A stretch of DNA of 62,820 nt, the filler included, from Octopus bimaculoides (lineage: Eukaryota), in NCBI RefSeq assembly GCF_001194135.2. It is 6 parts of 6 records of this genome, joined end to end, with 100 filler letters (N's around TTAATTAATTAA, not from the genome) between each part and the next. Parts side by side here need not be neighbours in the genome. Positions count along the whole stretch, not along the records: positions 13,483 to 38,860 come from NC_068985.1; 5 more parts are not named here. One strand, written 5' to 3'. The notes under the pieces are model-generated. The model had not been told where the DNA came from and did not search any database. It was given only the letters and a program-made list of their open reading frames with translations. Below, in pieces: positions 18,195 through 37,105 of the stretch (positions are counted from its first letter, which is position 1; the number at the start of each line of letters is the position of its first letter). The translations under genes were made by a program, and so were the position numbers.

Positions 18195-19455
18195 TGGTCG
18201 TCTACTCATGATTGAGGAAGACCATTGCTGACCTTCAGGAACATTGTGCGCTCTAGGACTAACTTATATTTTGCATCTGCAGCTATGTTGGTGACTAATG
18301 AGCCCTACTCTTGACAAGCATACATGACTGCAAACATTGCAAACCAAGCTTTCCCCATTCACTACACTAGCAGTGTGCTTTCGAGTAGCACACTTAAATT
18401 CTTCATGCAGAATACGTGCTCTCTCAAAGGTGTCGGTCCTTTCCTTAACCTGCTTCCTCCATCTGCTCTCCCAGTCAGTTTCCTGCATATCACAGGCCTT
18501 TAATGAGGACTTAACACAGTCCTTAAATTGCAACCTTGGTTTCTGCTGGGGTCTCTTTCCATTAACAAGCTCCCCATATAGCATCTGCTTAGGGATCCTG
18601 CTATCCTTCATTCTAATAAGGTGTCCAGTCCAACGTAACCAGTGCCTGTGCACCATCACCTCAATACTCAAGATATAAGATCTCCTCAGGACTTGTGTGT
18701 CTGGAGTTTTTAAGGTCCAGTCAACATTCAGAATGTGTCTCAGACATCTCTAATGAAAGTGTTCAAGGACCTTTACATGACATTTGTAAAGGGTTCTTGT
18801 CTCACATGAGTAGAGGAGCGATGTCAGTACACTTGCACAGTACACAGCAATTTTTGTTTGTTTTGTGATGCCATGCTGGGACCAGACACAAGACTGAAGA
18901 GACTGGAAGGAATCAGTTGCTCTCTGCAGCCTGAAAGATATTTCCTCATCCAAGGAGCAAGAACAGCTGAGTGTGCTGCCCAGGCAGACAAACATGTCTA
19001 CCACTTTCAGTATTGTTCCTTCGACCAAGATAGTTGGTTCCACATATAGATTTCCTGGTGCAGACTGGAACATTACAACAGTCTTGTCCAGACCAATGCT
19101 GATTCCAAATGCCTTGCAAGAAGCAGAAATATGATTCATAAGTATTTGCATGTCATCCACTGTATGAGTGACTAAGTCACAGTCATCTGCATAAAGGAGG
19201 TCATGAATAAGAGACTGGAAAACTTTTGAATTGGCGGCAAATTGGTGCAGATTAAAGAGGCAGCCAAAAGATCAATACCTGATATATATTCCCAGAGAGC
19301 TAACCTTAGCAAAAGCATGAGTAAAAGAAACAACAAAGTACAGAGAAAAGAGAGTTGGGACAATGATGTCACCCTACTTGACACCATTCTTTACAGGAAT
19401 GGGTCCCGCCATGCCGCCACCAACATTGACCCAAGCCTCCATCCCATCATGAAAT
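18195..19455 (-). mobile_element. RTE-clade LINE, 3' fragment (RT C-terminal half), degraded
   Basis: Minus-strand LLYADDC region, FGISIGLDKTVVM, YCASVLTSLLYSCET, LRWTGHLIRM...KQMLYGEL and C-terminal CNVCSHVC...GLISH. Confidence 0.9.
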
Positions 19456-19986
19456 AATTTAATTATGGGTACAAAGTGATCTGGACATCTAAGTTTGCCA
19501 AGTATTTTCTATAGCAAGGCCCTATTCACAAAGCTGTTAGACGCTGGCATACAGCGATCGATGTATACGCAGTGAACGTTTTCTCCATTTGCGTGCAATA
19601 AGGCTTAGGGCAAGCAATTGTAATATCGAAATAACTTGAAAAGAATGCATGTGGGAATGCCGTTATAATGAATGCTCATTTAAATGTATTTTGCATGGAG
19701 TTGATGTACTTTTTAACAGGAGAGGAGTGCCTGCAGGCTGGTTCTTCTCAAGTTTATGCATTTTCAGGTTCAATGTGTTTCAAATAAGTACTGACAATTA
19801 AAGGTGATTGCAAAGACAAAGAACTACCTGTTTTTTTTTAACAATTTTAACAGTGAGAACATTGGACAAAATATGTTATTGACATTAATAGTTTGTACCT
19901 CAGCTAATTACTGTTGAGAACTGCATAATCCATGTGTCATGTTAGAGATCTAAAAGGCATTTTCGAATTTCATTATTTTCTTTAAT

Positions 19987-20014
19987 CCAGGCAACGCTGG
20001 ATATTTCTGCTAGT
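19987..20014 (+). mobile_element. Helitron-like 3' terminus
   Basis: Hairpin ccag-gcaacg-ctgg followed 9 nt later by CTAG-T (20010-20014). Confidence 0.45.
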
Positions 20015-20831
20015 TAGCCTATAAACTTAAATTCCTTATCCACTCCTAACTCTTTACTTACAACCATCATATAATATTTTTTTACAAATTACCACAAAAT
20101 TTCCTGCTGCATTATCTGCTCGTACTATTACATATTTTTTATGTAATTCATTTATGTATTCTTTAACTAGTGGTTTATTCAAAACTGAATCTTTCCCGAT
20201 CCACTTATCAAATTTCTTTAAATGTTTAACTACCATATAAGTTAATTTGCTAACCCAGCTATTGAACTCATCCAATTTGACCTTATTTTTTGAGACTTAA
20301 TTTAACTATGAATTCATTAATGGCTTTAAATATAACTTTCTTTAAATTATATTTACTAATTTTACCCTGTTCTCTGTATTTTGTCCCTTTACTCATAATC
20401 TCCCTTAGTTCCTTATTTTTAATAATATCTAAATTTCTTGTATAAACATGTCCTATTTCTTTATAACAAAATTCCGAATTATCTCCTTTACAATCTTCTA
20501 AGTATATTTCTTTCAAACTTTCAAGACTGATTTTTGATAGGATCTTATCATAATTAAATAAGGTATTACATATCTTCTTACCAAGCTTATAACAAATCTT
20601 GACATTTATATGTCTAACATTTTCCAGCAAAAGGATTTTTTTGTTTTATTATTTCTAATTACCTTACCTGAATTAACATCATCAATGAAATTACTGACAT
20701 AAGGTATTTTTAAGTATTCAACTTTAACATAATTGGTTTTCACTTTAGCTTCTTTCATTGACCTATTAAAAAAACTATCCACTAAAAAACTAACTTCAGA
20801 TAGTTGGCATATCTCCATTATTTCTTTAAGC
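20015..20831 (-). mobile_element. Penelope-like element fragment, Naiad-type EN-RT linker and RT N-terminus
   Basis: Minus-strand LKIPYVSN, TLFNYDKIL, DCKGDNSEFCY..IGHVYT, SKGTKYRE, LHKKYVIVRADNAAGNFVVICKK; frameshifts fall in A-runs. Confidence 0.7.
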
Positions 20832-21639
20832 TCACTCTTTTTAATCCAGGTGGAGTGAAGATTCTCTTTTCGATGTACCGATGGGGGCATACGACGGGGC
20901 TGAATTGTGTATGCTTATAGGAGCTTACATTCTGCACTATCTGAAACTAGAATTTCCGTTTATAGATGCAGGATTATATAGAGATGACAGTCTTATAGTC
21001 ACCCATAATTTAAACGGCCACGAACTGGATAAGCTTAGGAAGGATCTTATAGCTTTCTTCCAAAGGATAGGCTTACGGATCACAGTAGATACTAACCTAA
21101 AAAAAGTAGATTTCTTAGATGTAAATTTAGATTTGAATTCAAATATATTCAAACCTTACCGTAAACCAAATGATAAATTATTCTATATTAGCAGAGAATC
21201 CAACCATCCGCCTGTTATTCTTAGAAACTTAGTTAGCAACATAGGTAGGCGAATATCGTCAATTTCTGCGGACGAGGCAACATTCTGTAACGCAGCACCT
21301 TATTATAATAGCGCTTTAAGGAATAGTGGATTCTCTGAGAGGATCCAGTACACCCAGTCTAATGCTAGCAGCAGTGCAGCACGTAGAACTAGGACTAGGA
21401 AAGTTTTGTGGTTCAACCCAGCTTTCAATATGGCCGTAAGAACTAATATAGGTAAGGAATTTTTTAAATTGGTCTCTAGGCACTTTCAACCTGATCATAA
21501 GTTTTACAGAATATTCAATAGAAGAACGCTTAAGATCAGCTATTCTTGCTGCAAAAACTTCGCCTCTTTGATCGGCCAGCACAACAATAAGATAATTGCC
21601 AAAAACCATAATGCCGACTCGCTTACAAAGAGCTGCAAT
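20832..21639 (+). mobile_element. Penelope-like element RT fragment (second, different family)
   Basis: LFDVPMGAYDGAELC, GLYRDD, VDFLDV, PYRKPN, SNHPP, WFNPAF, IFNRRTLKISYSC; open frame cut by a SINE at 21640. Confidence 0.88.
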
Positions 21640-21883
21640 ACCAGCATCGGTTGTCAAGTGATGTTGGGGGACAAACACAGACACACAAATACACACACAT
21701 ATATATATATACATATACATATGATGGGCTTCTTTCAGTTTCCGTCTACCAAATCTACTCACAGGCTTTGGTCAGCCCCAGGCTATAGTAGAAGACACTT
21801 GCCCAAGGTGCCATGCAGTGGAACTGAACCCAGAACCATGTGGTTGGTAAGCAAGCTACTTACCACACAGCCACTCCTGCACC
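21640..21883 (-). mobile_element. CORE-like SINE (family C), 5' part
   Basis: Reverse complement of the family C head plus internal microsatellite. Confidence 0.85.
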
Positions 21884-21889
21884 TATATA

Positions 21890-22484
21890 TATAATTACTA
21901 TATTTTTCATATTTGAGATAACATTCTTAAAAGTAGTCGTACTTTTTTCTTGTCAGACCAACTTTTACACTCTTCTTTGAAGATTTCTTCATATCTACGC
22001 AAATATGTAGAGAAGGTACCTTCTGGATTGTATTTGAATTCTCCAATTGAGTTTGCTACGCTGTCTGGCAAGTACGAACCTGAAGTATTTTCAGACTTTT
22101 TCAGTGTTAATTCCAGCAACTGTTGGTTTTTTTGTTGCTACTGAAGTTGCTGCTGCCATTGCTGCTGTAACTGCTATTGCTACTGCTGTAGTTGCTGTTG
22201 CAACTACACCATTCAGGTCAATAAGTTCTCCATTTTAAAATGATTTTTTCTTTGGTTTTGTATCAAAAATTTTAAATGCCCAACACAATTTTCAAACAAC
22301 TCGTCACCACTTCTATATCCTTGTATTGGATATCTGATATAACAAAGCAGGGGTGAAGAAAGTATATACACAATGCACCACTATTAATATTACACGAAAC
22401 TCAACACTCTCGATCACAGCTAGAAGCAAACTGCTTACCAATACGAACTGCCAATCGCTCACAGTTCTTTGTTTTATAACAACA
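21890..22484 (-). mobile_element. Gypsy (Mag-like) LTR retrotransposon 5' end: short LTR, PBS and gag start
   Basis: TGT...ACA LTR candidate at about 22322-22484, PBS-like tggtgacgag at about 22300-22309, gag-like FSTYLRRYEEIFKEECKSWSDKKKVRLLLR. Confidence 0.65.
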
Positions 22485-23590: not shown

Positions 23591-24497
23591 TTATGACCCT
23601 AGTGTAGTGTCATCTTGTAACTGTGTATATACATATTCATCAGATGGAATGAGATGAAGTGGCTTATCTGTGTTGTTCCATTTGTCACAGATATGGTCAT
23701 AAATTCTTGGTGGCTGAAGATTACCATTGGCAATTGCAGGTTTATTATCTAGTTTTAAAGAGTTGTTTTGTGAGTTATTTTCACCAACGTTACCATCTGT
23801 TTGCCTTTGGAATGTGGAATACTGACTTTTTAATTCATTTGGCTCTGTAACAGTTTCATAAATGTCATTAACCTGACTGTTGTTCCTGTCCTGATCAGAA
23901 GTGAGTAAATCATCAACTCTCTCATAAATTGCATCAGGCTCTGATGCACTGTCACTTTCCATCAGAGGAGCTGATGGAAGGGCACGGTCAAAATATTCTG
24001 GAGACAGAGAAGAACATTGATAACATGGAACTTCTTTATATACTATAGCCTCATTAACTTCTTGAGAACCTGGCTTTGCTGTTGAATCTTTTGATGCCTG
24101 CCGATGAAGGCTACCTGTTTTTCTCAGAGATCCATTCGGTTTTACTTTCTTCATTCTGGGACAGGTGGAATTCATTCTACCCTGAACCATTTCTTCAACA
24201 ATTTGATCATAGTTGTCTTTGATAGTCAAAGAGGGTATTTTCTCTAACACTGTCCTTGGACTCCTTAATTTACTGTAGCGCTCAACAACAGGATCCTGGT
24301 TTGACCCTTTAACTTCATCAATACAATTGTAAGTGTTTTCCTCAACTTTTTTCTGAATAATCTCATCATCAGCTTCAACAGTAAAATAAGTATTCTCTTC
24401 CTCTGGTGAAGCAGCATCAAAATTCTCAGGAAGGTGAGTACAACCATATAAACCAGTTGCTGAAGATGGCGGAGCTGCCACAGATTTTTGCTTTGGT
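23591..24497 (-). CDS. Terminal exon of uncharacterised type I receptor: tyrosine-motif-rich cytoplasmic tail
   Basis: 907-nt open frame in AT-rich DNA; acceptor ttttgatttatttcag|A, phase 2 matching the TM exon; TAA at 23593-23591; AATAAA downstream (e.g. 23435-23440). Confidence 0.88.
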
Positions 24498-24556
24498 CTG
24501 AAATAAATCAAAATTAAGAGAAAGTTAAACATAATGTCAAATTAAAATGGTTATTT

Positions 24557-24590
<34 letters not shown>

Positions 24591-25069
24591 ACACACACAC
24601 ACGTGCGTGCACCACCAACACACACAATAGACATATAAAGATGGATAAATTATGCTAGATGGATTCATGGCTTAGCAGATTAAATTGTGAAAATGTACCA
24701 ATCAGAAAAGTGGTATATCCAGGCTTCCTAATTTTCCCTACGCTGCAGAGTGAAGGAACCTATCAAAGGTCTTCTGTTGACTGATAAATGTAAAGCCCAG
24801 TGGGTTTTTTCTTAGTAGTTGTTTTTCTGAGAATATTTCATTTGTAGTTCCACATCCTGATCCAATCCCAAATTGCATTATATCCAATGTAATTCTATTC
24901 CGAAATAACTTCACTGATACTCTACACTGCTGTTTTAATTTTAGGAAATCATATTACTCAATAATGAAACTAACAAAGGAAAAGCTTGCGTGCGCACACA
25001 CACACACATATATTATTGATCATTGGCAGAAATTACAGAATGGTTCAATGGCAAAGAGATTCATGCAGG

Positions 25070-26563
25070 TAGACAGAAACTGAAAGAAGCCCAATGTACA
25101 TATGTATATATGTGTATATATCTATCAGGTCATCCCATAAGTTCTGTCCAAATTTTGAATAAAGAAAACAAGTGATCAAATGTTATATTTAATTGAAATT
25201 TAATCATCAATGTACTTTCCCTGATTATCTATGACTTCCTTCCATCTATTTACAAGCTTTTTAATCCCATCAATGTAAAACTCTTTTGGTTTCAAAATGA
25301 AGAACTCTGAAATGTTAGTTTCGACCTCCCCCTGGCTTGCGAAAGTTATGTCCCCCAAATGATTCTGTCAACTACAAAACAAATGATAGTCTGAAGGAGC
25401 AAGGTTGGGAGAATAAGGTGGATGAGGATTTTTTTCCCTACCAAGCTCTTTGATCTTTGCANNNNNNNNNNNNNNNNNNNNNNNNNNNNNNNNNNNNNNN
25501 NNNNNNNNNNNNNNNNNNNNNNNNNNNNNNNNNNNNNNNNNNNNNNNNNNNNNNNNNNNNNNNNNNNNNNNNNNNNNNNNNNNNNNNNNNNNNNNNNNNN
25601 NNNNNNNNNNNNNNNNNNNNNNNNNNNNNNNNNNNNNNNNNNNNNNNNNNNNNNNNNNNNNNNNNNNNNNNNNNNNNNNNNNNNNNNNNNNNNNNNNNNN
25701 NNNNNNNNNNNNNNNNNNNNNNNNNNNNNNNNNNNNNNNNNNNNNNNNNNNNNNNNNNNNNNNNNNNNNNNNNNNNNNNNNNNNNNNNNNNNNNNNNGTC
25801 CATTTTCCAAGTTTAGGAACCTTTCCAAGTTGTTGAAGATAATGATGAACAGTTGTATGGTTTGAACTAAGCTTTATTGCGAATTCTTCAACTGATAATG
25901 CAGGATTTTCTTCAAGTAATACCTCAAGGAGCTTATCATCAAACTCAACTGGACATCCTGTTTGATCTTCATCTTCAAGGCTGAAATCTCCACTTCTGAA
26001 TTTTGCAAACCATCTTCTGCAAGTTCTTTCATTCAAGCATTCTTTCCCATAAACTGAGTGTATGTTTCGAGTCGCTTCGGCTGCAGAGTTTCCTTTTTTC
26101 TACTCATAAAGTATTACGTGCCTCAAATGCTCTTTGGATACTTCCATGTTAGAAAAGGTTTTAATCAATGAAATTTTAATTCTATTATTCTGTAAAATAA
26201 TATTTAATTAGCTTAAATGTGCACAAATGCATAAAAATAATTTTTAATTCCATTAGACATTCTAAAATACTATTAAATTTCATTCAATTTTAAAAAAGGT
26301 AAAATCAGACAGAACTTATGGGATGACCTGATATGTTTGTGTGTCTTAGTGTCTGTGTTTGTCCCCTACCACCACTTGCCAACTAGTGCTGAAGCGTTTC
26401 CGTCCCAGTAACTTAGCAGTTCAACAAAAGTGATCGATAGAATAAGTACCAGGCTTTAAAAGAAAAAAATAAGTGCTGAGATAAATACATTCGACTAAAG
26501 AATTCTTCAAGGTGGTGCCCTAGTCTAATGACTGAACAAGTAAATGATAAAAGATAAAAGATA
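25070..26563 (+). mobile_element. Family C SINE remnant split by a mariner insertion
   Basis: 5' part to 25124 (gacagaaactgaaagaagccc) resumes at 26332 (gtgtctgtgtttgtcccc...gactgaacaagtaaa). Confidence 0.75.
25125..26331 (-). mobile_element. Mariner transposon with perfect 24-bp TIRs and TA TSD; transposase disabled
   Basis: TIR tcaggtcatcccataagttctgtc and its exact reverse complement; ATG at 26147 (MEVSKEHLRHVILYEY...RRWFAKFRSGD); HPPYSPNLAPSDYHLF followed by a premature stop. Confidence 0.95.
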
Positions 26564-26814
26564 TATTCCAAGTCATTTCTTCTGACAACTTAGGTAGATT
26601 TTTTTTTTTTTCTTTTCTGCTACTTCACATAATTGCTCCACTTTGAGGTAGGAACAAAGAATGCTTAAGAAGAATGCGGTGCAAGTTGAAGCACCATATA
26701 AAGGTTCTAAAGATAAGGTTTGAAATTGTACCCAGGTTATCAGAAGTTCAGACAAGCTTCACTTCACACTTCATGTACCTTATTGAAAAAAAGCAAATGC
26801 AAATTGAAACTAAC

Positions 26815-26899
26815 CTTCTCAAAATGACAATAAAACACACTGTTAAAGTGATGAGTGTTAGTCCACCAGCAATTCCTATTGTTAAGTAATTGACAATTT
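26815..26899 (-). CDS. Transmembrane exon of the uncharacterised receptor
   Basis: ttttttcag|AA...AG|gttagt; 85 nt, phase 1 to 2; encodes IVNYLTIGIAGGLTLITLTVCFIVIL-RR, then PKQK from the next exon (positive-inside). Confidence 0.85.
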
Positions 26900-28289
26900 C
26901 TGAAAAAAATATATATATACAGATATATATTAAAAATATATATAAAAGAAAATGCTGTTCAACAAACATGATAGACCACAGATTATGTGTAAGGAAGTAG
27001 AGTAGTTGATTCACTCAAACCTAATACATGCAAGAAAGTTATTTTGTAAAACCCAAATAGATGAAATGCACAGCACAGTTGGAGTTTTGGCTTTCACTTC
27101 ACAACCTATGAGTAAATTAATAAGTCTTTCCTCTTTAGTATGTAAGAGCAAAATTCTAAAAAAAAATCATGCTAAATTGTCTGCTATCACACGCATGCTT
27201 ATCAGAAGTTCTATACATATCTTCTATATTTCCTCACCNNNNNNNNNNNNNNNNNNNNNNNNNNNNNNNNNNNNNNNNNNNNNNNNNNNNNNNNNNNNNN
27301 NNNNNNNNNNNNNNNNNNNNNNNNNNNNNNNNNNNNNNNNNNNNNNNNNNNNNNNNNNNNNNNNNNNNNNNNNNNNNNNNNNNNNNNNNNNNNNNNNNNN
27401 NNNNNNNNNNNNNNNNNNNNNNNNNNNNNNNNNNNNNNNNNNNNNNNNNNNNNNNNNNNNNNNNNNNNNNNNNNNNNNNNNNNNNNNNNNNNNNNNNNNN
27501 NNNNNNNNNNNNNNNNNNNNNNNNNNNNNNNNNNNNNNNNNNNNNNNNNNNNNNNNNNNNNNNNNNNNNNNNNNNNNNNNNNNNNNNNNNNNNNNNNNNN
27601 NNNNNNNNNNNNNNNNNNNNNNNNNNNNNNNNNNNNNNNNNNNNNNNNNNNNNNNNNNNNNNNNNNNNNNNNNNNNNNNNNNNNNNNNNNNNNNNNNNNN
27701 NNNNNNNNNNNNNNNNNNNNNNNNNNNNNNNNNNNNNNNNNNNNNNNNNNNNNNNNNNNNNNNNNNNNNNNNNNNNNNNNNNNNNNNNNNNNNNNNNNNN
27801 NNNNNNNNNNNNNNNNNNNNNNNNNNNNNNNNNNNNNNNNNNNNNNNNNNNNNNNNNNNNNNNNNNNNNNNNNNNNNNNNNNNNNNNNNNNNNNNNNNNN
27901 NNNNNNNNNNNNNNNNNNNNNNNNNNNNNNNNNNNNNNNNNNNNNNNNNNNNNNNNNNNNNNNNNNNNNNNNNNNNNNNNNNNNNNNNNNNNNNNNNNNN
28001 NNNNNNNNNNNNNNNNAGATATAGATATATAGATATAGATATATACATACACACACACACACACTCACATAAAGGGTAAAACCTCTTCGGTCATGAACGA
28101 CCATGGGGTTGCACCTAGAATGTTCCCCTTCCGAGGCACAAGTCCAGGCAAGGTTGTTTATGGAAAACCAGAAGTCACCCATGCACACCAGCCTCCCCTT
28201 TCCACATCACTGGTGTTATCCAAGGAAAAGGCAAAGGCTGATACAGTTTGGCACCAGTGATGTCACAATTCATTTCTACAGTTGAGTGA

Positions 28290-28412
28290 ATTGGAACAAT
28301 GGGAAATAGAGTGTCTTGCTCAAAAACACAACACACAGTCCAGTCTGGGAATCAAACTTAGTACCTCATGATTGTGAGCCCAACGCTCTAGCCACTGAGC
28401 CACATGCCTTCA
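28290..28412 (-). mobile_element. Family B-like SINE head with a different downstream body
   Basis: Aligns with 2110-2229 (gtgtcttgctcaa..acacaac). Confidence 0.65.
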
Positions 28413-29904
28413 CACACATACACACATGCACACACACACACACACACAGANNNNNNNNNNATTTCTCTCACTTTCTTCTCTACTTTCAGCATAGTTTGCT
28501 TTTTTATTTTTTTAATTATTTTTTTTTCACCATTCTGCTTTTCCATTTGTCCCCTTTTTTGTTTCCAGTCCCATTGGACATTTTCCTTTCCTTTGCATTA
28601 CCCATACACTTATCTCATCTTAGAACTGCACAGCCTTATTTTGTTTGTCTATTGTAAATTTATTTTGTTTGCATATTCACATTTGTGTTGTGTGTGTTTT
28701 TGTCACTGTCTTCAACATTTGCTCACAATTCCCAGCAGCTTCACATTGTTGATGCCACCAAAAGTGAACAATATTATTGTTAAAGGCATGAAATTGTAAG
28801 GATCTTTTGGATGATATCTGATGAGGAATGAGTAATGTGTGAATTTTCTGTTGGTTTCTTTGTTGCATTTTTATTTAATTTTTGGGAACTATTTTATATA
28901 TATATATATCATCATCATCATCATCATCATGCTAACATGGGTTGGATGATTTGACTAAGGACGGGTGAACCAGATGACTGCACCAGGCTCCAATCTGATC
29001 TGGCAGAGTTTCTACAGTTGGATGCCCTTCCTAACGCCAACCATTCCAAGAGTGTNNNNNNNNNNNNNNNNNNNNNNNNNNNNNNNNNNNNNNNNNNNNN
29101 NNNNNNNNNNNNNNNNNNNNNNNNNNNNNNNNNNNNNNNNNNNNNNNNNNNNNNNNNNNNNNNNNNNNNNNNNNNNNNNNNNNNNNNNNNNNNNNNNNNN
29201 NNNNNNNNNNNNNNNNNNNNNNNNNNNNNNNNNNNNNNNNNNNNNNNNNNNNNNNNNNNNNNNNNNNNNNNNNNNNNNNNNNNNNNNNNNNNNNNNNNNN
29301 NNNNNNNNNNNNNNNNNNNNNNNNNNNNNNNNNNNNNNNNNNNNNNNNNNNNNNNNNNNNNNNNNNNNNNNNNNNNNNNNNNNNNNNNNNNNNNNNNNNN
29401 NNNNNNNNNNNNNNNNNNNNNNNNNNNNNNNNNNNNNNNNNNNNNNNNNNNNNNNNNNNNNNNNNNNNNNNNNNNNNNNNNNNNNNNNNNNNNNNNNNNN
29501 NNNNNNNNNNNNNNNNNNNNNNNNNNNNNNNNNNNNNNNNNNNNNNNNNNNNNNNNNNNNNNNNNNNNNNNNNNNNNNNNNNNNNNNNNNNNNNNNNNNN
29601 NNNNNNNNNNNNNNNNNNNNNNNNNNNNNNNNNNNNNNNNNNNNNNNNNNNNNNNNNNNNNNNNNNNNNNNNNNNNNNNNNNNNNNNNNNNNNNNNNNNN
29701 NNNTATATATATATATATATTCATTAGTATGTGAGTGTGTCTGTATGACAGGTTTCCTGCAGTTTCCATCAGCCAAATTCACCCACAAGGTATTGGTCTG
29801 TCTGAGGCTACAGTTGAAGACATTTACACAGGTGAAGTAAAGAGAAAAGTCAGAGTAAAGAATTTTATTGGTAAATTCAAACCTGTTTTAAATGGACAAT
29901 AATG

Positions 29905-30050
29905 ATCCTTTCTACTATTGGGGAGAGGAGACTAGTTGAGTACATCAACCCCAGTGTTTCACTGGTACTTAATTTATTGACCCTGAAAGGGTGAAAGGCA
30001 ATGTCGAAAGAACTTGAACTCAGAACATTGCAACGAGTGAAATACCGCTA
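29905..30050 (-). mobile_element. tRNA SINE (family D), decayed
   Basis: Reverse complement of the 45445-45897 copies. Confidence 0.7.
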
Positions 30051-30774
30051 ATAACACTTATAGTAATAACAGTTAATAGTAATAACAGTTAATAACAGTA
30101 TAATAACAATTAAAGTTACAGTGATAATTGTGATGATGATAATAATAATACTACCACTGCCACCACTAACACAACAATAATAAAGGTGGTGGTGAGGATA
30201 GTAGTAGTGTTAACCATATCAATACTGACTTGATTGAAATGTAAAATTTCTGGAAAACTGTAACAATAGAATTCTATAAAAACAGGAACATTGTTTACAA
30301 CATTCCAAAACAATTATTCCTTTAGGTGCAGTCAAAGTAAACAATCCTTGATGTACACACCAAACTATGATGTCTAAGCTGCATACCAATTAAGAAAAAC
30401 ATCTTGTCAAAAAAAGCAGGATAAATGCTAACCAAGTTGGTGCATTCACCAGATAATGACATCTAAGCCTGATACTGACTTAGTTGGCGTGCTCACTAAA
30501 TCATGACATCTAAGCTACATACTAATTGATCAAAATACAGGTCGTAACATTCAGCCTACTGGAGCCCATTGGCGGGTATTTAACGGACAAATCTAACCAT
30601 TTCACTACAGTTGTCAGTTGTGGAGCACAACTGTCACTACATAAACCTAATGATTGTGTAATGTATGAAAATACTAGATTACTCCAATATTGTAAAATTG
30701 GAAAAATTGGAAAAGTGGAAATAATAAAAGATGAAAATCAGACTAAGTTAGAATTTCATTGATTAATACATATA

Positions 30775-31650
30775 CATCATCATCATCATCGTTTAACATC
30801 AGCTTTCCATGCTGGCATGGGTTGGACGGTTTGACTGAGGGTTGGCAAGCCAGAAGACTGCACCAGGCTCTAATTTGATCTGGCAAAGTGTCTACAGTTG
30901 GATGCCCTTCCTAATGCCAGCCACTCTGAGAGTGCATTGGGTGCTTTTTACATGCCGCCAGCACAAGGGCCAGTCATGTGGTACTGGCATTGACCATGCT
31001 CAGATAGTGCTTTTTACATGTCACTGGCACAGGAGCCAGTCAGACGAAACTGGCAACGATCACACTCGAATGGTGCTTTTTATGTGCCACTGGCACAAGA
31101 GCCAGTCAGGCAGCACTGGCAATAATCACGCTCGAATGGTGCTTTTAACATGCCACTGGCACGGGTTCCAATCAGGCAGTACTCTCATTGGCCACGACAA
31201 CAATTTCACTTGCCTCGACAGGTCTTCACAAGCACAGTTTATTTCCCAATGATTGAAGGGTACTCTTTAAATGGGCTGGTTATACTGCAATAGCATAGGC
31301 CACAGTTATGGTCTCACTTGGCTTGCCGGGCCTTCTCAAGCACAGCATATCTCCAAAGGTCTCAGTCACTTGTCATTGCCTCAGTGAGGCCCAATGTTCC
31401 AAGGTCATGCTTCACCACCTCATTCCAGCTCTTCCTGGGTCTACCTCTTCCACAGGTTCTCTCTACTGCTAGGGTGTGACACTTTTTTACACAGCTGTTC
31501 TCATCCATTCACAACACATGCCATACCAGCGCAGTCGTCTCTCTTGCACACCACATCTGATGCTTCTTATCTCCAACTTTTTCTCTCAGGGTGCTTACAC
31601 TCTGTTGTATATGCACACTGACATTATACATTCAGTGGAGCATACTGGCT
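30775..31650 (-). mobile_element. RTE-type LINE 3' fragment with about four 60-66-bp tandem repeats in the 3'UTR
   Basis: Minus-strand RCGVQERRLRWYG and GRGRPRK; tandem units at about 30940-31190 (gtgcttttta..tgcca.tggcac); CAT tail. Confidence 0.8.
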
Positions 31651-31689
31651 TCATTCCTTGCAAACTTACACATGTCCTCAACAGTCATA

Positions 31690-31758
<69 letters not shown>

Positions 31759-33658
31759 TGTTAAAGGAAATAAATTCTCACTAATCTACTCCATTTATGT
31801 TTGTACATTATTTAGGATTCTGAAACTGAAATCATATGATCATATAAATGTGTGGAAAAAAGGTTATTGGTTTGTCTTGATTATGCACAAATAGATGAAT
31901 GATATGTTCCTCCACTGAATCAATCCCAAATATATCAGTGAGTTTAGTGATACTCAGAATAATGTAAAGTTAAATTTGATAATGGTAGGACTTAAATTCA
32001 AAATAGCAAGACATCAAACAATATACAATAAAGCATCTTATTTGACATCTGGTTTGAAATTAATTAATGATATGTTTAAAAAGTATGAAGCTTAAAATGC
32101 ACAGGGCACTATGGTTTTCTATCAGTTATAAGGATGTCAATGATATAAGTGGAACAAATTCAGCTGTGAGCTGAAACTAAATCTCACACACAATTTTGCA
32201 ACAAACTTCATACCACTATCAACAAATTGATCAAATATTAATTTGTTTTGGCTCTGTACAAGGCCAAAGAGAGGGTATATTTGATAGAAAAAATCAAATT
32301 ATTTTTATATTTATGGAACTTGTTTTAGTCATCCTATAGGAGATAAAAGAGAAATGATCCTCACAAGTGTTTAACTTGGAAAGAGGTAACAAATTTATCA
32401 AATAATGATTTAGTTAAACTGGCTAAAGGGATTTAAATTTTAAGAGAAAGCAAAGTGAAATTTAGTGACATCAGCAAAATAAAGTGCATCAACCAAAATT
32501 CAAAAGCCAATTATGATATCAGTTCACAAGTTTAAAATGTTTAAATAATGAACACAACTGTTAGACATCAAATTGTAAAATAAAAAAGAAACAATAGGAT
32601 AAGGTTAAAATAGAAAGGCAACAGAATTCGGATTAATATTTTGTGTGTAATAGAGTACTGGAATGTTTTCTGATTCTATCTCAAAAGAAAGAGGGAGGAA
32701 AAAAACAAGCATTTTTTTACTGCTGTGAGGTATCACTCAGACAGCACCTGGTTAAATAACAGTAGCAAAAACAAATACATCAATAAAGTGCTCAAACGTG
32801 AAGGGAGTAATATCATATAGACTAGGAGTGATCAATTCAAGAAGTACTTAGTTCTTGAAGATGTTCCAAATGACCCCAGAACTGCCATGCAAACTGACCT
32901 TAGCAGATACCTAAATGATAAAAAGTTATATGTGTGCATGTTTCCCATAAAGTTGAAAATTATGCTTTTGTGACCCAAGAGTAAAAAATATCAATTGAAT
33001 ACCAACTGAACTAAAAAATGTTGTTATATCACATATTTGTGGAAGATAAGATGTGTTTTCATGATCAGTAACTGCTACAAAATATCATATAGGTACTATT
33101 TCTTCCAAGGCAGTATGGTGTTTTTGCTAAAACAATATTCAATGCCACTCTTAGAAAAGACTTCCATGGGACTGTTATAAAAAAATATTTTAAATGCTTA
33201 GTATATCCATGCATTTCAATACATTGATAAAACATTCCAATCAAAACACCCACTAAATTCAAACACAACAGAGTTGTTATAGTTGTTTGAAACAGAAAAA
33301 AGCCTGTGTACAATTATTATGGTTAGCTGCCCTACAGAGGTGAACATTTCATTCAAAATCAGTGAAAGATAAAATATTTATGATCAATTGTTTTGAAACC
33401 TACAGATTCTCTTCCCAGATTATAAATTTACATTTGTACTCTTAATCATTAAAACACTTGGTTATGTTAGTAATTGTACCAAAACCATTTACCCGGCAAA
33501 TTCATTCTACAAGTAGAACAGTGAAAATATACCAGACTTTTCTTAAGTTCACCATGTTACTATATACTGTTGCTGTTATCTGAATTCTGAAGATAGGGAT
33601 TTGTTTCTTAGTTAGAAACCAATCTGTTTTTGTAGGAGGATATTAAGAAAGGGATATA

Positions 33659-34949
33659 CTGGATCATCCTATAAATAATGGAGCTTTTTTATACTTCTTT
33701 CATTTTTCAAAATTAAGATAAACAAACTTCTTTTTTAATCTAAAATATACTCTCCTTCATTTTCTACAACACTTTTCCATCTATCTGGTAGACATGCAAG
33801 GCCCCTCTTCCAAAATTCACTTGTCCGTGATGAAAAATACTCCTCTAGTACTGTTCTGACCTCATCTACAGAATTCATTTTTTTTTTGTCCAAACGATTT
33901 TGAAGACTGTGAAATAAATGATAATTAGATCGGGTAATGTCTCACAAATATGGTGGGTGGGGCATCTTTTCCCATTCAAACTGCTCCAGGCTTTGGAATG
34001 TCATCCTCGCTGTATGTGGACGAGCATTATCCTGATGGAAGAACACCTTTTGTCTTGAAAACAAAGACGGTTGTTTTTCTTCTAGCACTGATTTAAGCTG
34101 CTTAAGCTGCTCACAGTAGATCTCTTTTGTTATTGTTTGGTTTGGGTTTAAAAGTTCAAAGTGGACTAAACTTTTCATATCCCACCAAACAGATAACAAC
34201 ACTTTATGTGGGTGAAGACCTTTTTAGCCTGGGGTGCCGATTTTTCTCCTTTCCTTACCCACTGTCTTTGGCACTTGATATTTTTATAGAGAACCCATTT
34301 CTTGTCACCAGTCACTATTCAGTCCAAAAAAGGTTCATTTGTGAGACATGACAGCAAAGGAGAGCACACATTCACTCTCCGCACGCGATTTTAACTCGGA
34401 AAGTTTGTGAGGAACCTATTGACCCAATTTGCTGACTTTTCCAATGGCACGCAGGTGTTGATGAATGGTTGAAAGACCAAATCCAAGCTTCTCTGCTAAT
34501 TCTTCAACAGTTATGATGGGATTTTGTTCCACCAGGATTTGCAGGATGTCCTCATCAAGTTATACAGATCTTCCAGGATGAGGCTCATCTTCTAGGCTGT
34601 AGTTACCTGCTTGGAATTTCTGGAACCACCATTGACAATGGCTTACACTTATTGTCCAATCCCCATATACTGTATTAATAATCCTTGCACTTTCCATTGC
34701 GTTGTTGCCTTTATGGAACTCGTAAAGCAAAATATGCTGAATATGCTACTTTGTCACTTCCATTATAACTTTGAAAAAATAACTGTTAAAATCAAACTAC
34801 ATTTTTCAAAACTTGCAGGTATTAATTTTAAGGGAAGTTAAAATTAATACCTGTTTTTATAATAAGTTGATGTAGGTAGTTTATCATGTCCTCCTCCAAC
34901 TTTTAGTTCATGCAATTGAAAAAACCGCATTATTTATGGGATGAACCAG
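33659..34949 (-). mobile_element. Full-length (about 1.29 kb) mariner transposon, degraded
   Basis: Imperfect TIRs ctggatcatcctataaataatg / cattatttatgggatgaaccag with TA flanks; ATG at 34763; LSVWWD, FHQDNARPHT, MPHPPY; in-frame stops. Confidence 0.92.
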
Positions 34950-35170
34950 TATATATACATACATGCATACAAACATACATAAACATATGCATATATATAT
35001 ATATATATAGATATATATAGAGAGAGAGATAGAGAGAGAGATAGAGAAAGAGAGAGACACATACACACACATACATACACACAGAACAGACAGAGAAGAC
35101 CAACTTGATTGGTTAGCTCTATGGTAAAGTAATAGATTACCATACTATTTACAAGAGATCCCTATCTTAC

Positions 35171-35395
35171 CTCGTGGAAACATCCTTTTATCAACATTGT
35201 AGAAACCAGGAAGAGAGGATACTTCTTGAGAAGGCAAGAAGGAAGTGGTGTCAACGTAATGAGAAATGGTTTCAACTTCTGTAGGGTAGCTACCTGTAAT
35301 GTTCTCTTCAACTGCTTCATTTTCGTTAAACTTTGGATTACCAGAATTTGTCTTCAAAAAGAATTCTTTGAAAATTCCTTCACAGTCATCAGAAT
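35171..35395 (-). CDS. Stalk exon of the uncharacterised receptor (Ser/Thr/Pro/Glu-rich)
   Basis: tttcatttcaaag|AT...CGAG|gtaaga; 225 nt, phase 1-1, open; contains an NIT sequon. Confidence 0.75.
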
Positions 35396-35929
35396 CTTTG
35401 AAATGAAACAAAATGAGCATAAAAATAAAACTACTTTTTATTTATTATTTAAATATCAGTCTGAAACTAGTTTATTTTTAGTTCTAACTCTTCAAATAAA
35501 ATACCTGAGAGTTACTGTAAAGGGATCAACACAATATAATTATTTAAGGTATAATAAAGGCAATACACTAAATAAAACAGTGTGCACTACAGCACGTATT
35601 CTATCTCATGAAGTGAGTTAAAACTGTTGCATAAAGTTAAAATAAACCATCTGGTTCTAAGGCATTGCATCCAGAAACAAATTCCTTGCCTGTTTTAGAT
35701 ATGTTCAAGCACTTTTAAATGTCATCAATTCAGTTATTGATAATATTTAAAGTATTTTCTAATAAAAAAAACTGAATCTAACATTCTGTTATATTTTAGA
35801 ATATATATATATTTTACATCAAAATCTGTAAATTAAAAATATTATCGCTGGTATATAGGTATGTTGTAAGTTATTTGTAGTTGGTTTCCTTGTTTTTGTT
35901 TTGTTTCTTTATTCATTTTTTGTGGGAGG

Positions 35930-36320
35930 GGGTTGCATGTGGGTGGGGGTGATATTAAAAAAATTTGAAGTGTTTGGATTACAGGACACATTCACAGACA
36001 TAAGCAGTGCATTTCACTGTGGCATACTTGACTGCAATGTATAAGGAGATAATTCTCTCTGTTGTAAACAAAGAAGTTGTCTGTAAAATGTATTCCACTA
36101 TTTTCACTTCCTAGTATCTTAACAGCTGAGAAAATTTCACTTGTGGCTTCACATTATCAACATCTGATGTTAAAAAAGATATAAAACAACTGAAGGTCTC
36201 TGGAGCTATATGAACTTTGATCAATTTGGAGGAATCCATAAGTCCTTTAGGTTTTCAAGTTCTGTGTAAGGTAAATAATGAAATGGCAATCGAAATCTTG
36301 TTTCATAGAAAAAGCTTCCA
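35930..36320. repeat. Local direct duplication, copy B
   Basis: Aligns with 37650-38018 at an offset of about 1.70 kb. Confidence 0.92.
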
Positions 36321-36784
36321 AGAAGGGGGAAGGAAAAAAGGTTTACACATTCAAGATTACAGTGGTTAAAAACAATTACATGTATAAGAATATTTGAAGA
36401 AGTGAAATCTGTAGTATTAGTGAGTTATTGAAGATTTATGATGCTCTGTAAAACAATCATAGAACACTATCATAGATTATTATTGAGATTTCTCTGGATC
36501 TTTAAAAATGATTATAAATTTTGCATGCTTAGAAAACATTGAACTGACTACCCAAATTTATGTAAAATAACTGGTATCATCTGAATTTATATTAGAATAT
36601 TTGAAAAGGACATGGGCTGTTTGCATTAGTCTGGTGCCTCACTAGTTCCATCGTGCATGAATATGTGTGAACTAGCATGTATGAATGCATGTGTTCATTT
36701 TTATGTGAATGATTTGTAAATGTGAGTGTATGTATATATGGGTGTGTTTACCAAGTAGTAATAAGGTAAATATTGTGTACTTAC

Positions 36785-37105
36785 TAACATGTAAGAACCA
36801 AATCACTTTGTCACAATCATAGAAAATTGTTTGTAAATAATCTCCATCTGCAATATTTTTATTGGGAATGTTATACTGATAGTAAGGATGCATGTCTGTA
36901 TCACAGTCCTTGCATGTTTTTACATGAACTCTTTGGCTTTGAAGTATTAGCCATCTATTATTAGCAAATTTGTTAGGAATTATGCCACACGGATATATTG
37001 AATCTTTGAACTTGTGCTGTGTATACTTGTAGCATCGCACATCAAAATCCTCTTTCACTACTTTGTGCTTTGATGTAATTTCTTCACAACCCAGGATTAA
37101 AGATT
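36785..37105 (-). CDS. Extracellular exon of the uncharacterised receptor: divergent C-type-lectin-like domain
   Basis: ttacatttcag|AA...GTTA|gtaagt; 321 nt, phase 1-1, open. GC...F..RCYKY....F.DS...C, a WL motif and a late FYDC..VIWF follow CTLD spacing. The fold call is by eye. Confidence 0.75.

What the first reader, a model, noticed from the sequence alone, without database searches (positions are those of the whole stretch)
23591..37105. Orphan lectin-like receptor with a tail carrying ten YxxI/V/L/F motifs
Four exons join with canonical GT-AG sites and matching phases (1-1, 1-1, 1-2, 2-stop) into about 512 aa: a divergent CTLD-like domain, a stalk, one TM helix with RRPKQK, and a roughly 300-aa low-structure tail. 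Seen in sequence: 14 tail tyrosines, 10 with a hydrophobic residue at +3 (YFTV, YNCI, YSKL, YDQI, YKEV, YERV, YETV, YSTF, YDHI, YTQL). Several follow acidic residues (EENTY twice, DAIY, NDIY), and IVYKEV fits the ITIM consensus. Established: such motifs are Src/Syk/Abl-family substrates that dock SH2 proteins such as SHP2 and CSK. Inference: a recognition receptor that is its own phosphotyrosine scaffold, plausibly immune or neural. I do not recognise it as a named gene.
Basis: partly seen in the sequence, partly recalled or inferred. Interest (0 to 1): 0.8.

Follow-up and report, generated by a model that had tools for sequence, protein, structure and literature searches.

The report
Octopus orphan receptor with tyrosine-motif tail
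This is a real but uncharacterised octopus gene for a single-pass membrane protein. Its long, probably flexible inner tail carries seven deeply conserved tyrosine docking motifs, so it probably signals through tyrosine phosphorylation, but its outer part is not recognisably a lectin.

Summary
On the minus strand, four exons (37105-36785, 35395-35171, 26899-26815, 24497-23591) join through AG/GT sites. They give 511 aa that are 100% identical to residues 102-612 of Octopus bimaculoides XP_014768392.1, "uncharacterized protein LOC106867862".

The signal-peptide exon and a first Cys-rich exon lie beyond the piece's edge. All four N gaps are intronic. Gap-free orthologous loci in O. sinensis and Argonauta show the same exon structure with no extra exon.

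The tail has 14 tyrosines, 10 of them Yxx[IVLF], against 2.5 expected (0 of 100,000 shuffles).

Seven motifs survive in a tail homologue only 29% identical: YFxV, EENTYNxIDE, YDxI, DAIYExVD, DIYExV, IYDH[IL] and YxxL. Identity there is 57% around these tyrosines and 16% elsewhere.

The ITIM-like IVYKEV is not conserved. No test supports a C-type lectin domain; the ectodomain fold remains unknown because both AlphaFold models failed.

An exhaustive profile search of 1.84 billion proteins found only octopod orthologues and that one distant tail. The best reading is a lineage-restricted type I receptor that acts as a phosphotyrosine scaffold. Its grammar is neither ITIM nor ITAM, and its tissue and ligand are unknown.

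The parts
36785..37105 (-). It encodes the second Cys-rich ectodomain module, residues about 102-208 of XP_014768392.1. No family could be assigned.
   Evidence: Splice sites. 100% identity to P0001. The exon has the same size and phase in Argonauta. No Pfam or PDB hit.
35171..35395 (-). Coding exon 4, 225 nt, phase 1-1. It holds a short Cys-containing linker (NSDDCEG), the conserved N-glycosylation sequon NIT and a Ser/Thr-rich juxtamembrane stalk ending in the invariant NVDKRMFPRE.
35171..35293 (-). The 123 nt skipped in isoform X2 (XP_014768393.1) through an internal alternative donor, ACAG|GTAGCT, after base 35294. This removes the 41-aa stalk GSYPTEV...KRMFPR.
   Evidence: P0009 and P0006 against P0001 and P0002. 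The donor 15-mer ATTACAGGTAGCTAC is identical in Argonauta.
26815..26899 (-). Coding exon 5, 85 nt, phase 1-2. It encodes the transmembrane helix with the invariant GIAGGLTL (a GxxxG pattern) and one conserved Cys. The RR stop-transfer signal is completed across the junction.
   Evidence: The exon has the same 85-nt length and phases in Argonauta and in the distant locus L003 at 7126-7210.
23591..24497 (-). Coding exon 6: the cytoplasmic tail of about 300 aa plus the TAA stop (23591-23593). Composition is rich in S/E/D/N/P/K, with 14 Tyr against 4 Phe and 1 Trp.
24377..24400 (-). Conserved motif 1, EENTYFTV (Y348). The distant homologue has GEAMYFVI.
24320..24343 (-). Conserved motif 2, EENTYNCI(DE) (Y367). 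The distant homologue has EENTYNSIDE. Y367 lies 19-20 residues after Y348 in all three lineages.
24200..24223 (-). Conserved motif 3, KDNYDQI (Y407). The distant homologue has EDMYDHI.
23915..23938 (-). Conserved motif 4, PDAIYERV(DDL) (Y502), preceded by the acidic, Ser-rich cluster ESDSASE. The distant homologue has SDAIYEQVDEL.
23849..23872 (-). Conserved motif 5, VNDIYETV (Y524), 22-25 residues after Y502 in all lineages. The distant homologue has QQDIYESV.
23690..23713 (-). Conserved motif 6, PPRIYDHI (Y577). The distant homologue has VEGIYDHL.
23618..23641 (-). Conserved motif 7, DEYVYTQL (Y601), 24 residues after Y577 in all lineages. The distant homologue has DGHIYAHL.
24029..24052 (-). 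EAIVYKEV (Y464), the only ITIM-consensus motif in O. bimaculoides. It is not conserved: Argonauta has ETELYNPA, and no tyrosine aligns in L003.

Best explanation
The locus is the 3' two-thirds of Octopus bimaculoides LOC106867862. It encodes a lineage-restricted type I membrane glycoprotein (so far seen in octopods plus one distant homologue, probably another cephalopod).

**Architecture, shown**
- A signal peptide.
- Two unrelated Cys-rich extracellular modules, with 12 conserved Cys and 3 conserved N-glycosylation sequons.
- A Ser/Thr-rich stalk that the annotated second isoform (X2) lacks.
- A strongly conserved GxxxG transmembrane helix.
- A cytoplasmic tail of about 300 aa with a disorder-like composition.

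**Mechanism, inferred**
- The ectodomain engages an unknown ligand or partner.
- Cytoplasmic tyrosine kinases then phosphorylate seven conserved tail tyrosines. Src-family kinases are the likeliest, because three of the seven carry Ile at -1 and an acidic residue at +1 (a fourth has Val at -1).
- The phosphorylated pY-[E/D/N/F/T]-x-[V/I/L] sites dock SH2 proteins, so the receptor serves as its own signalling scaffold.
- Three tyrosine pairs keep a spacing of 19-25 residues in every lineage: Y348/Y367, Y502/Y524 and Y577/Y601. That would suit two-headed binding by tandem-SH2 proteins.
- The motifs fit neither ITIM, ITSM nor ITAM.
For: **Real gene under constraint**
- The product is 100% identical to the RefSeq model.
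- The six-exon structure and phases are identical in Argonauta.
- pN is far below pS in every exon, and dN/dS is about 0.2 overall.

**Topology**
- Full-length P0001 and P0003 have a signal peptide.
- N-glycosylation sequons N46, N80 and N239 are conserved only on the N-terminal side.
- RRPKQK follows the TM helix.

**Motifs are not chance**
- O. bimaculoides: 10 of 14 Tyr are Yxx[IVLF], 2.5 expected, 0 of 100,000 shuffles.
- Argonauta: 9 of 16, p = 4e-4.
- Distant tail: 9 of 10, 1.5 expected, binomial p = 3e-7.

**Motifs are the selected elements**
- Against the homologue that is 29% identical (L003, P0005), identity is 57% within +/-4 residues of the seven core Tyr and 16% in the rest of the tail (Fisher p = 3e-10).
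- Flanks beyond YxxPhi are conserved: EENTYN.IDE, DAIYE.VD.L, DIYE.V, IYDH.
- Pair spacing is conserved.

**Published and established background**
- Paired phosphotyrosines recruit tandem SH2 domains well beyond ITAM spacing (PMC12132298).
- PD-1 carries an ITIM at Y223 and an ITSM at Y248, 25 residues apart, which bind SHP-2 (PMC7078208).
- From my own knowledge, not tested here: Src-family kinases favour I/V at -1 with acidic neighbours, and group-I SH2 domains favour pY-E-x-[I/V].
Against: - There is no direct evidence of phosphorylation, of SH2 binding, or of expression in any tissue.
- YxxPhi is also the AP-complex sorting signal, and an acidic Ser cluster (ESDSASE) sits in the tail.
- The ectodomain fold and ligand are unknown.
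- Only four lineages are available. The taxon of the distant homologue (ENA ERZ21867824) is unidentified, and its ectodomain exons were not found in the 7 kb available upstream.
- The kinase and SH2 assignments come from vertebrate specificity rules applied to a cephalopod.
Confidence: 0.55

Rival explanations
1. It is an endocytic or sorting receptor. The YxxPhi motifs would be adaptor-complex (AP-1/AP-2 mu-subunit) signals, and the acidic Ser cluster a CK2/PACS-type signal. The protein would cycle cargo between the surface, endosomes and the TGN rather than signal.
For: - Ten Yxx[IVLF] motifs match the sorting consensus.
- The acidic Ser-rich cluster ESDSASE / TDSESDSD is conserved next to Y502.
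- A PSAP motif is conserved in octopods.
- The resemblance to the furin, TGN38 and mannose-6-phosphate-receptor tails is from my own knowledge, not a test.
Against: - Known sorting tails use one or two such signals, not seven (own knowledge).
- Conservation extends to positions that mu-subunit binding does not constrain: Ile at -1, E/D at +1, and EEN at -4 to -2.
- Pair spacing is conserved.
- PSAP is PSAS in the distant homologue.
Confidence: 0.2
2. It is an inhibitory ITIM-type receptor that recruits an SHP2/Corkscrew-like phosphatase.
For: - IVYKEV fits S/I/V/LxYxxI/V/L (consensus quoted from PMC8631942).
- A tyrosine-pair spacing of 19-25 resembles the 25-residue ITIM/ITSM spacing of PD-1 (PMC7078208).
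Against: - IVYKEV is not conserved in Argonauta or in L003.
- None of the seven conserved motifs has S/I/V/L at -2 in O. bimaculoides. The -2 residues are N, N, D, A, D, R and Y.
- Matches to the ITIM consensus appear at non-homologous positions in different species: DVIYERV in Argonauta and SYYGSV in L003.
Confidence: 0.1
3. It is a C-type-lectin-like pattern-recognition receptor, with exon 36785-37105 encoding a divergent CTLD that binds glycans.
For: Only loose resemblances seen by eye: VRCYKY, NNRWLIL, FYDC...W.
Against: - No Lectin_C hit at E<=10.
- No PDB sequence hit at E<=10 with the ectodomain profile, although PDB holds at least 134 CTLD sequences.
- hhalign against the DC-SIGN CRD gives probability 0.7%, and the aligned stretch lies in the stalk, not in the domain.
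- The largest Cys-Cys gap is 30 residues, whereas the CTLD C1-C2 gap in DC-SIGN is 71.
- Only about 21 residues lie between CYKY and WLIL, where a CTLD holds two helices (own knowledge of the fold).
Confidence: 0.07
4. It is not a functional gene: a mis-annotated, decaying or transposon-derived open reading frame.
For: - The introns are full of transposon relics.
- The O. vulgaris model is a chimera with a transposon ORF.
Against: - The exon structure and phases are conserved across octopods.
- dN/dS is about 0.2.
- The TM and tail exons keep the same length and phases in a homologue only 29% identical.
- The same alternative isoform is annotated in O. bimaculoides and O. sinensis, and the O. 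vulgaris model uses the short form.
Confidence: 0.03

Closest known systems
Paired-tyrosine single-pass receptors that dock tandem-SH2 phosphatases (PD-1, and from my own knowledge PECAM-1, PZR/MPZL1, SIRP-alpha, BTLA)
   Same: - Type I topology.
- A cytoplasmic tail with disorder-like composition.
- Tyrosine motifs ending in V/I/L, arranged in pairs about 19-25 residues apart. PD-1 has Y223 and Y248 (PMC7078208).
   Different: - No Ig domain and no detectable homology of any kind.
- The conserved motifs lack the hydrophobic or Ser residue at -2 that defines an ITIM, and the Thr that defines an ITSM (PMC8631942).
- There are seven conserved sites rather than two to four.
Transmembrane adaptor proteins (LAT, PAG1/Cbp, NTAL, LAX); comparison from my own knowledge
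   Same: - A long, low-complexity tail whose only strongly conserved elements are multiple tyrosine motifs.
- A conserved Cys in the membrane-proximal half of the TM helix, which could be lipid-modified.
   Different: - Those adaptors have ectodomains of only a few residues. This protein has about 255 aa with 12 Cys and glycosylation sequons.
- The motif classes differ: LAT uses YxN, PAG uses YSSV.
- There is no sequence homology.
Nephrin / Neph-type adhesion receptors that recruit Nck through YDxV motifs; comparison from my own knowledge
   Same: Repeated Y-D/E-x-V/I motifs (YDQI, YDHI, YERV, YETV) in the tail of a large single-pass surface protein. This would link to actin through SH2-SH3 adaptors.
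   Different: No Ig or FN3 domains and no homology. The +3 residue is I/L as often as V. Nck binding was not tested.
Type I membrane proteins with a C-type lectin domain (layilin, CD93, thrombomodulin group)
   Same: Only the general layout of an N-terminal Cys-rich module, a stalk, a TM helix and a tail.
   Different: Every CTLD test run here was negative. Those proteins also lack tails carrying many tyrosine motifs (own knowledge).
Sorting receptors with YxxPhi signals plus acidic clusters (furin, TGN38, mannose-6-phosphate receptors); comparison from my own knowledge
   Same: YxxPhi motifs and an acidic Ser cluster in a cytoplasmic tail.
   Different: The number of motifs, the conserved flanks beyond YxxPhi, and the absence of homology.

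Membership tests
C-type lectin-like domain (Pfam Lectin_C, PF00059) | A significant match to the family profile | tested here: not met
   Lectin_C is not listed even at E<=10 for the 511-aa model, P0001 or P0003. The ectodomain profile A3 finds no PDB sequence at E<=10, although PDB holds at least 134 CTLD sequences. hhalign of A3 against the DC-SIGN CRD gives probability 0.7%.
C-type lectin-like domain (Pfam Lectin_C, PF00059) | The CTLD disulfide framework, with a long C1-C2 separation followed by closely spaced C2-C3-C4 | tested here: not met
   In DC-SIGN (identical to 1sl4_A) C1 to C2 is 71 residues. In this ectodomain the conserved Cys are C30, 52, 77, 83, 98, 106, 125, 140, 165, 168, 198 and 213, and the largest gap is 30 residues.
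C-type lectin-like domain (Pfam Lectin_C, PF00059) | The double-loop alpha/beta fold with two helices | tested here: inconclusive
   Both AlphaFold2 jobs gave unusable models: mean pLDDT 28.1 for the full length and 34.5 for the ectodomain. Foldseek against PDB found nothing below E = 1.9 and no lectin.
ITIM-bearing inhibitory receptors | A conserved S/I/V/L-x-Y-x-x-I/V/L motif (consensus from PMC8631942) | tested here: not met
   Only IVYKEV (Y464) fits in O. bimaculoides. Argonauta has LYNPA there and L003 has no Tyr. The seven conserved Tyr have N, N, D, A, D, R and Y at -2.
ITIM-bearing inhibitory receptors | Recruitment of SHP1/SHP2-type phosphatases on phosphorylation | not testable with these tools
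   This needs binding assays.
ITAM-bearing receptors and adaptors | YxxL/I-x(6-12)-YxxL/I | tested here: not met
   Conserved Tyr pairs are 19-25 residues apart. The short gaps (6, 9 and 13 residues) involve non-conserved tyrosines or tyrosines without a YxxL/I context.
SUEL / rhamnose-binding lectin domain (my own lead for the Cys-rich modules) | Sequence or profile similarity to a solved RBL domain | tested here: not met
   No Gal_Lectin hit in Pfam. hhalign of domain 1 (A4) and domain 2 (A5) against the latrophilin-1 RBL (identical to 2jx9_A) gives probabilities of 0.2% and 0.5%.
Phosphotyrosine scaffold receptors (a functional class, not a homology family) | Several tyrosines in a tail of disorder-like composition, conserved more strongly than their surroundings and carrying kinase- or SH2-type flanks | tested here: met
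   Seven Tyr are invariant across octopods and L003. Identity is 57% in the motif windows and 16% outside, p = 3e-10. Enrichment is replicated in three lineages.
Phosphotyrosine scaffold receptors (a functional class, not a homology family) | The tyrosines are phosphorylated and bind SH2 or PTB proteins | not testable with these tools
   This needs phosphoproteomics or pull-downs.
YxxPhi sorting-signal cargo | A YxxPhi motif in the cytoplasmic tail | tested here: met
   Ten Yxx[IVLF] motifs. The motif alone does not separate sorting from SH2 docking.

The most novel reading that the evidence does not exclude
This would be a cephalopod-born receptor family. It would combine two extracellular Cys-rich domains of previously undescribed fold with a private phosphotyrosine code: three conserved tyrosine pairs and one single site, fitting neither ITIM, ITSM nor ITAM. 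Signalling would run through tandem-SH2 effectors. Alternative splicing would remove a juxtamembrane stalk carrying an invariant dibasic KR site and so might switch the receptor between sheddable and non-sheddable forms. That would make it an independently evolved counterpart of vertebrate immunoreceptor or adhesion scaffolds.
Probability: 0.3. Interest if true: 0.65.

Novelty: new variant of a known kind. Interest (0 to 1): 0.45.

Why it matters
Cephalopods have no antibody-based immunity and have very large nervous systems, yet almost nothing is known about their lineage-specific surface receptors. This gene has a clean architecture. Its ectodomain has no detectable relatives, and its tail has motif-level conservation that points to a testable biochemical function: tyrosine phosphorylation and SH2 docking.

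If confirmed, it would be an example of phosphotyrosine scaffold receptors arising independently outside vertebrates. It would also give a handle on which SH2 effectors cephalopod cells use. If the ectodomain proves to be a new fold, it is of structural interest as well. As it stands it is an annotated but uncharacterised gene, and the functional claims are inferences from sequence.

Tried and rejected
1. **Structure prediction.** AlphaFold2 on the full length with 4 sequences gave pLDDT 28.1. The ectodomain alone with 3 sequences gave 34.5. Both models are unusable, and Foldseek against PDB on the second gave only noise (best E = 1.9, chemokines and ribosomal proteins). The alignment is too shallow.
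2. **Internal duplication of the two Cys-rich modules.** I suspected this from the shared '...Y.E/D.YC' endings and six Cys each. hhalign found nothing (probability 0.05%). Rejected.
3. **SUEL / rhamnose-binding lectin for either module.** Rejected.
4. **CTLD.** Rejected at sequence level.
5. **More homologues.**
   - Three word-indexed searches found only the four octopod proteins and P0005.
   - The exhaustive profile search added only P0005.
   - A JGI metagenome scan with tail patterns gave 600 pattern hits, none confirmed.
6. **Ectodomain exons of the distant homologue.** hmmsearch of the octopod ectodomain profile against all ORFs in the 7.1 kb upstream of its TM exon found nothing.
7. 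**Taxon of L003.** It shares no DNA-level similarity with the octopod loci outside the tail exon. It remains unidentified.
8. **Transcript evidence.** The Logan contig that carries P0004 is genomic, because intron sequence precedes the tail exon. No RNA junction evidence was obtained.
9. **Closing the gaps.** L002 is the same assembly with the same Ns. The O. vulgaris locus was not delivered because the gene range exceeds 100 kb.
10. **Literature.** No paper mentions LOC106867862, LOC115212129 or the XP accessions. None combines cephalopod or octopus with immunoreceptor tyrosine-based motifs.

Full report
**Source and gene model**

The usable piece (13483-38860) is the reverse complement of Octopus bimaculoides chromosome record CM046605.1 in assembly GCA_001194135.2. 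Window position 38860 corresponds to position 85422 of locus L002. All non-N blocks match at 100%, and the N runs are the same.

The gene lies on the minus strand.

| Exon | Window coordinates | Length | Phase | Content |
|---|---|---|---|---|
| A | 37105-36785 | 321 nt | 1-1 | second Cys-rich module |
| B | 35395-35171 | 225 nt | 1-1 | linker and stalk |
| C | 26899-26815 | 85 nt | 1-2 | TM helix |
| D | 24497-23591 | 907 nt | 2 to TAA | tail |

- Every junction has an AG acceptor behind a pyrimidine tract and a GTAAG/GTTAG-type donor.
- The spliced product is 511 aa. It is 100% identical, over its whole length, to residues 102-612 of XP_014768392.1, 'uncharacterized protein LOC106867862 isoform X1' (612 aa).
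The gene is already annotated, but only as uncharacterised, and no paper in the library mentions it or its orthologues.

- The model is cut at its 5' end. The full gene has six coding exons spread over 90.7 kb.
- An 82-nt signal-peptide exon and a 219-nt exon for a first Cys-rich module (residues about 29-101) lie upstream of the piece's edge.
- A second RefSeq isoform, X2 (571 aa), uses an internal donor in exon B (ACAG|GTAGCT, last exon base 35294).
- X2 drops the 41-aa stalk GSYPTEVETISHYVDTTSFLPSQEVSSLPGFYNVDKRMFPR.
- The same short form is annotated in O. sinensis and used in the O. vulgaris model. The 15-nt donor context is identical in Argonauta.

**The assembly gaps**

- All four gaps are intronic. 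Three lie in intron B-C and one in intron C-D, so 'in frame across the gap' does not arise. The real question is whether an exon hides in them.
- The same assembly cannot answer this, but two gap-free orthologous loci can.
- Argonauta hians (L001, no N) has the same six exons with the same phases: 97/222/321/228/85/916 nt against 82/219/321/225/85/904.
- O. sinensis (L005, no N) is collinear with the window at 88-94% identity.
  - At the equivalent of gap 25462-25797 it holds the stop-ridden middle of a mariner-type element.
  - At the equivalent of the 27239-29703 gaps it holds only about 620 bp without a usable reading frame.
- The orthologous proteins are contiguous across both junctions: KRMFPRE|(I/V)VNYLTIGIAGG...IL(R/K)R|(P/S)K.
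- No exon is missing.
- One discrepancy: blocks 28461-28737 and 28137-28448, which are separated by a 10-N joint, are in the opposite order in O. sinensis. This looks like a scaffolding mis-order inside the intron.

**Is it a functional gene?**

- Between O. bimaculoides and Argonauta, non-synonymous divergence is far below synonymous divergence in every exon: pN 0.07-0.26 against pS 0.47-0.82.
- dN/dS is about 0.2 overall. Synonymous sites are close to saturation, so the ratio is approximate.
- Three N-glycosylation sequons (N46, N80, N239) and 12 cysteines are conserved on the N-terminal side. RRPKQK follows the TM helix. This is the signature of a type I membrane glycoprotein.

**Distribution**

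- A profile of the four octopod sequences was scored by HMMER against 1.84 billion representative proteins. It found only the octopod cluster and one other protein, P0005 (E = 1e-7, tail only).
- P0005 lies on a 94-kb contig of ENA assembly ERZ21867824.
- In that locus (L003) I found an 85-nt TM exon (7126-7210), phase 1-2, encoding ...AGIAGGLTLLTFSVCVSVLFKK. It sits 2.7 kb upstream of a phase-2 tail exon.
- L003 therefore has the same exon length, phases and GIAGGLTL core as octopus, at only about 29% protein identity.
- Its ectodomain exons were not found in the 7 kb available, and its taxon is unknown. It is most likely another cephalopod lineage.
- Further protein searches and a metagenome scan added nothing. 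'Orphan' is a fair description.

**The tail**

- It has 14 Tyr in 303 residues, against 4 Phe and 1 Trp.
- Ten are Yxx[IVLF], where 2.5 +/- 1.4 are expected. None of 100,000 shuffles reached 10; binomial p = 2e-5.
- The excess is repeated in Argonauta (9 of 16, p = 4e-4) and in the L003 tail (9 of 10, expected 1.5, p = 3e-7).

Seven tyrosines are invariant from octopus to L003, together with their flanks:

| Tyr | Conserved context |
|---|---|
| Y348 | YF(T/V)(V/I) |
| Y367 | EENTYN(C/S)IDE |
| Y407 | D(N/M)YD(Q/H)I |
| Y502 | DAIYE(R/Q)VD(D/E)L |
| Y524 | DIYE(T/S)V |
| Y577 | IYDH(I/L) |
| Y601 | (V/I)Y(T/A)(Q/H)L |

- Identity to L003 is 57% within +/-4 residues of these tyrosines and 16% in the rest of the tail (Fisher p = 3e-10). 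Selection acts on the motifs, not on the tail as a whole.
- Y385 (YSKL), Y464 (IVYKEV), Y470, Y537 (Tyr replaced by Cys, although STF is kept) and Y599 are not conserved.

**Motif grammar**

- Measured against the published consensus (ITIM S/I/V/LxYxxI/V/L; ITSM TxYxxV/I; PMC8631942), none of the seven conserved sites qualifies. Their -2 residues are N, N, D, A, D, R and Y.
- There is no ITAM. The conserved tyrosines are never 6-12 residues apart in a YxxL/I context.
- Three features are conserved instead:
  - Ile at -1 with Glu or Asp at +1 in three of the seven sites (Y502, Y524, Y577). Y601 has Val or Ile at -1 but Thr or Ala at +1. This is a Src-family-type substrate context and a pY-E/D-x-V/I docking context (my own knowledge, not tested here).
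  - An acidic, Ser-rich cluster before Y502.
  - A pairing of sites: Y348/Y367 (19-20 residues), Y502/Y524 (22-25) and Y577/Y601 (24) keep their spacing in all three lineages, although the sequence between them is not conserved. Octopods add a fourth pair, Y385/Y407 (22).
- Such spacing is in the range used by paired sites that bind tandem SH2 domains. PD-1 has Y223 and Y248 (PMC7078208), and modelling indicates that tandem-SH2 avidity works well beyond ITAM spacing (PMC12132298).
- This is an inference, not a result.

**The ectodomain**

- Nothing supports a C-type lectin domain:
  - No Pfam hit at E<=10.
  - No PDB sequence hit with single sequences or with a profile, although at least 134 CTLD sequences are in that library.
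  - hhalign against the DC-SIGN CRD gives 0.7%, and the aligned stretch falls in the stalk.
  - The cysteine spacing (largest gap 30 residues) is incompatible with the CTLD C1-C2 span (71 in DC-SIGN).
- My own alternative leads also failed: a SUEL/rhamnose-binding lectin, and an internal duplication of the two modules.
- Both AlphaFold2 runs were uninformative for lack of alignment depth. The fold is simply unknown.

**Most likely mechanism (confidence about 0.55)**

- The protein is probably a lineage-restricted surface receptor whose tail is a multi-site phosphotyrosine scaffold.
- Shown: gene structure, topology signals, orphan status, motif enrichment, and motif-centred conservation.
- Inferred: phosphorylation by Src-type kinases, SH2 docking, possible two-headed engagement of the tyrosine pairs, TM-helix association through the invariant GxxxG, and regulation by splicing out the stalk.
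- Main rival (about 0.2): the YxxPhi motifs and the acidic cluster are trafficking signals of a sorting receptor.
- The ITIM-inhibitory and CTLD-lectin readings are weak.

**Verdict**

- The finding is real and was carefully observed.
- The gene is annotated but uncharacterised.
- It is a new variant of a known kind of signalling molecule. Its interest is moderate, and would rise if the ectodomain proves to be a new fold or if the paired-tyrosine code is confirmed.

Noticed in passing
window 35171-35294 (-): An alternative 5' splice site inside exon B (ACAG|GTAGCT) gives RefSeq isoform X2, which lacks the 41-aa Ser/Thr-rich stalk. That stalk ends in NVDKRMFPRE, which is invariant in the octopods and contains a dibasic KR that could be a shedding or convertase site. 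The donor context is identical in Argonauta.
   Followed up: partly
window 33738-34745 (-), in intron B-C: A degenerate Mos1/mariner-type transposon relic. Its pieces match HTH_48 (E = 1.5e-18) and Transposase_1 (E = 6.6e-18) and are broken by stops and frameshifts.
   Followed up: yes
window 25203-26036 (-), in intron C-D, spanning gap 25462-25797: A second mariner-like relic. Its N-terminal and C-terminal reading-frame pieces flank the N gap. The O. sinensis equivalent holds about 600 bp of stop-ridden transposase there, so the gap hides transposon sequence, not an exon.
   Followed up: yes
window 28137-28448 and 28461-28737: These two blocks, joined by a 10-N gap, lie in the opposite order in the gap-free O. 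sinensis locus (L005 12039-12355 and 12342-12608). This is probably a scaffolding mis-order in the O. bimaculoides assembly. In O. sinensis the whole stretch equivalent to 27239-29703 is only about 620 bp.
   Followed up: partly
window 24545-24600 (-): A (TG)n(GA)n microsatellite lies 50-100 nt upstream of the tail-exon acceptor. A TG run is also present at the same place in another Octopus species (L004), but it is absent in Argonauta and L003. Any effect on splicing is unknown.
   Followed up: partly
window 23966-23977 (-): A PSAP motif (the ESCRT/TSG101-type late-domain sequence) is conserved in all octopod tails and explains the faint Pfam Gag_p6 hit in Argonauta. The distant homologue has PSAS.
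   Followed up: no
window 24086-24157 (-): A basic stretch, RMKKVKPNGSLRKTGSLHRQASKD, carries RxxS-type sites (RKTGS, RQAS). The distant homologue has WRRKPSTS at the aligned place. These are possible basophilic Ser-kinase sites.
   Followed up: no
window 18264-21894, both strands, downstream of the gene: Several long ORFs look like retroelement remnants. One is the 337-aa ORF at 20881-21894, which contains LYRDDSLIV. Two others at 18264-19160 resemble LINE-type reverse-transcriptase tails. None hits Pfam at E<=0.01.
   Followed up: partly
O. vulgaris protein CAI9722506.1 (P0008): The 821-aa O. vulgaris model fuses about 250 aa of transposon-like ORF to the N-terminus of the orthologue. The same ORF also appears as the separate 172-aa protein P0007 on another chromosome. 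This is an annotation chimera.
   Followed up: partly
window 26820-26888 (-): The TM helix is unusually conserved: 88% identity between Octopus and Argonauta, and GIAGGLTL is invariant down to the homologue that is 29% identical overall. It contains a GxxxG pattern and a conserved Cys, which suggests helix-helix association or lipid modification.
   Followed up: no
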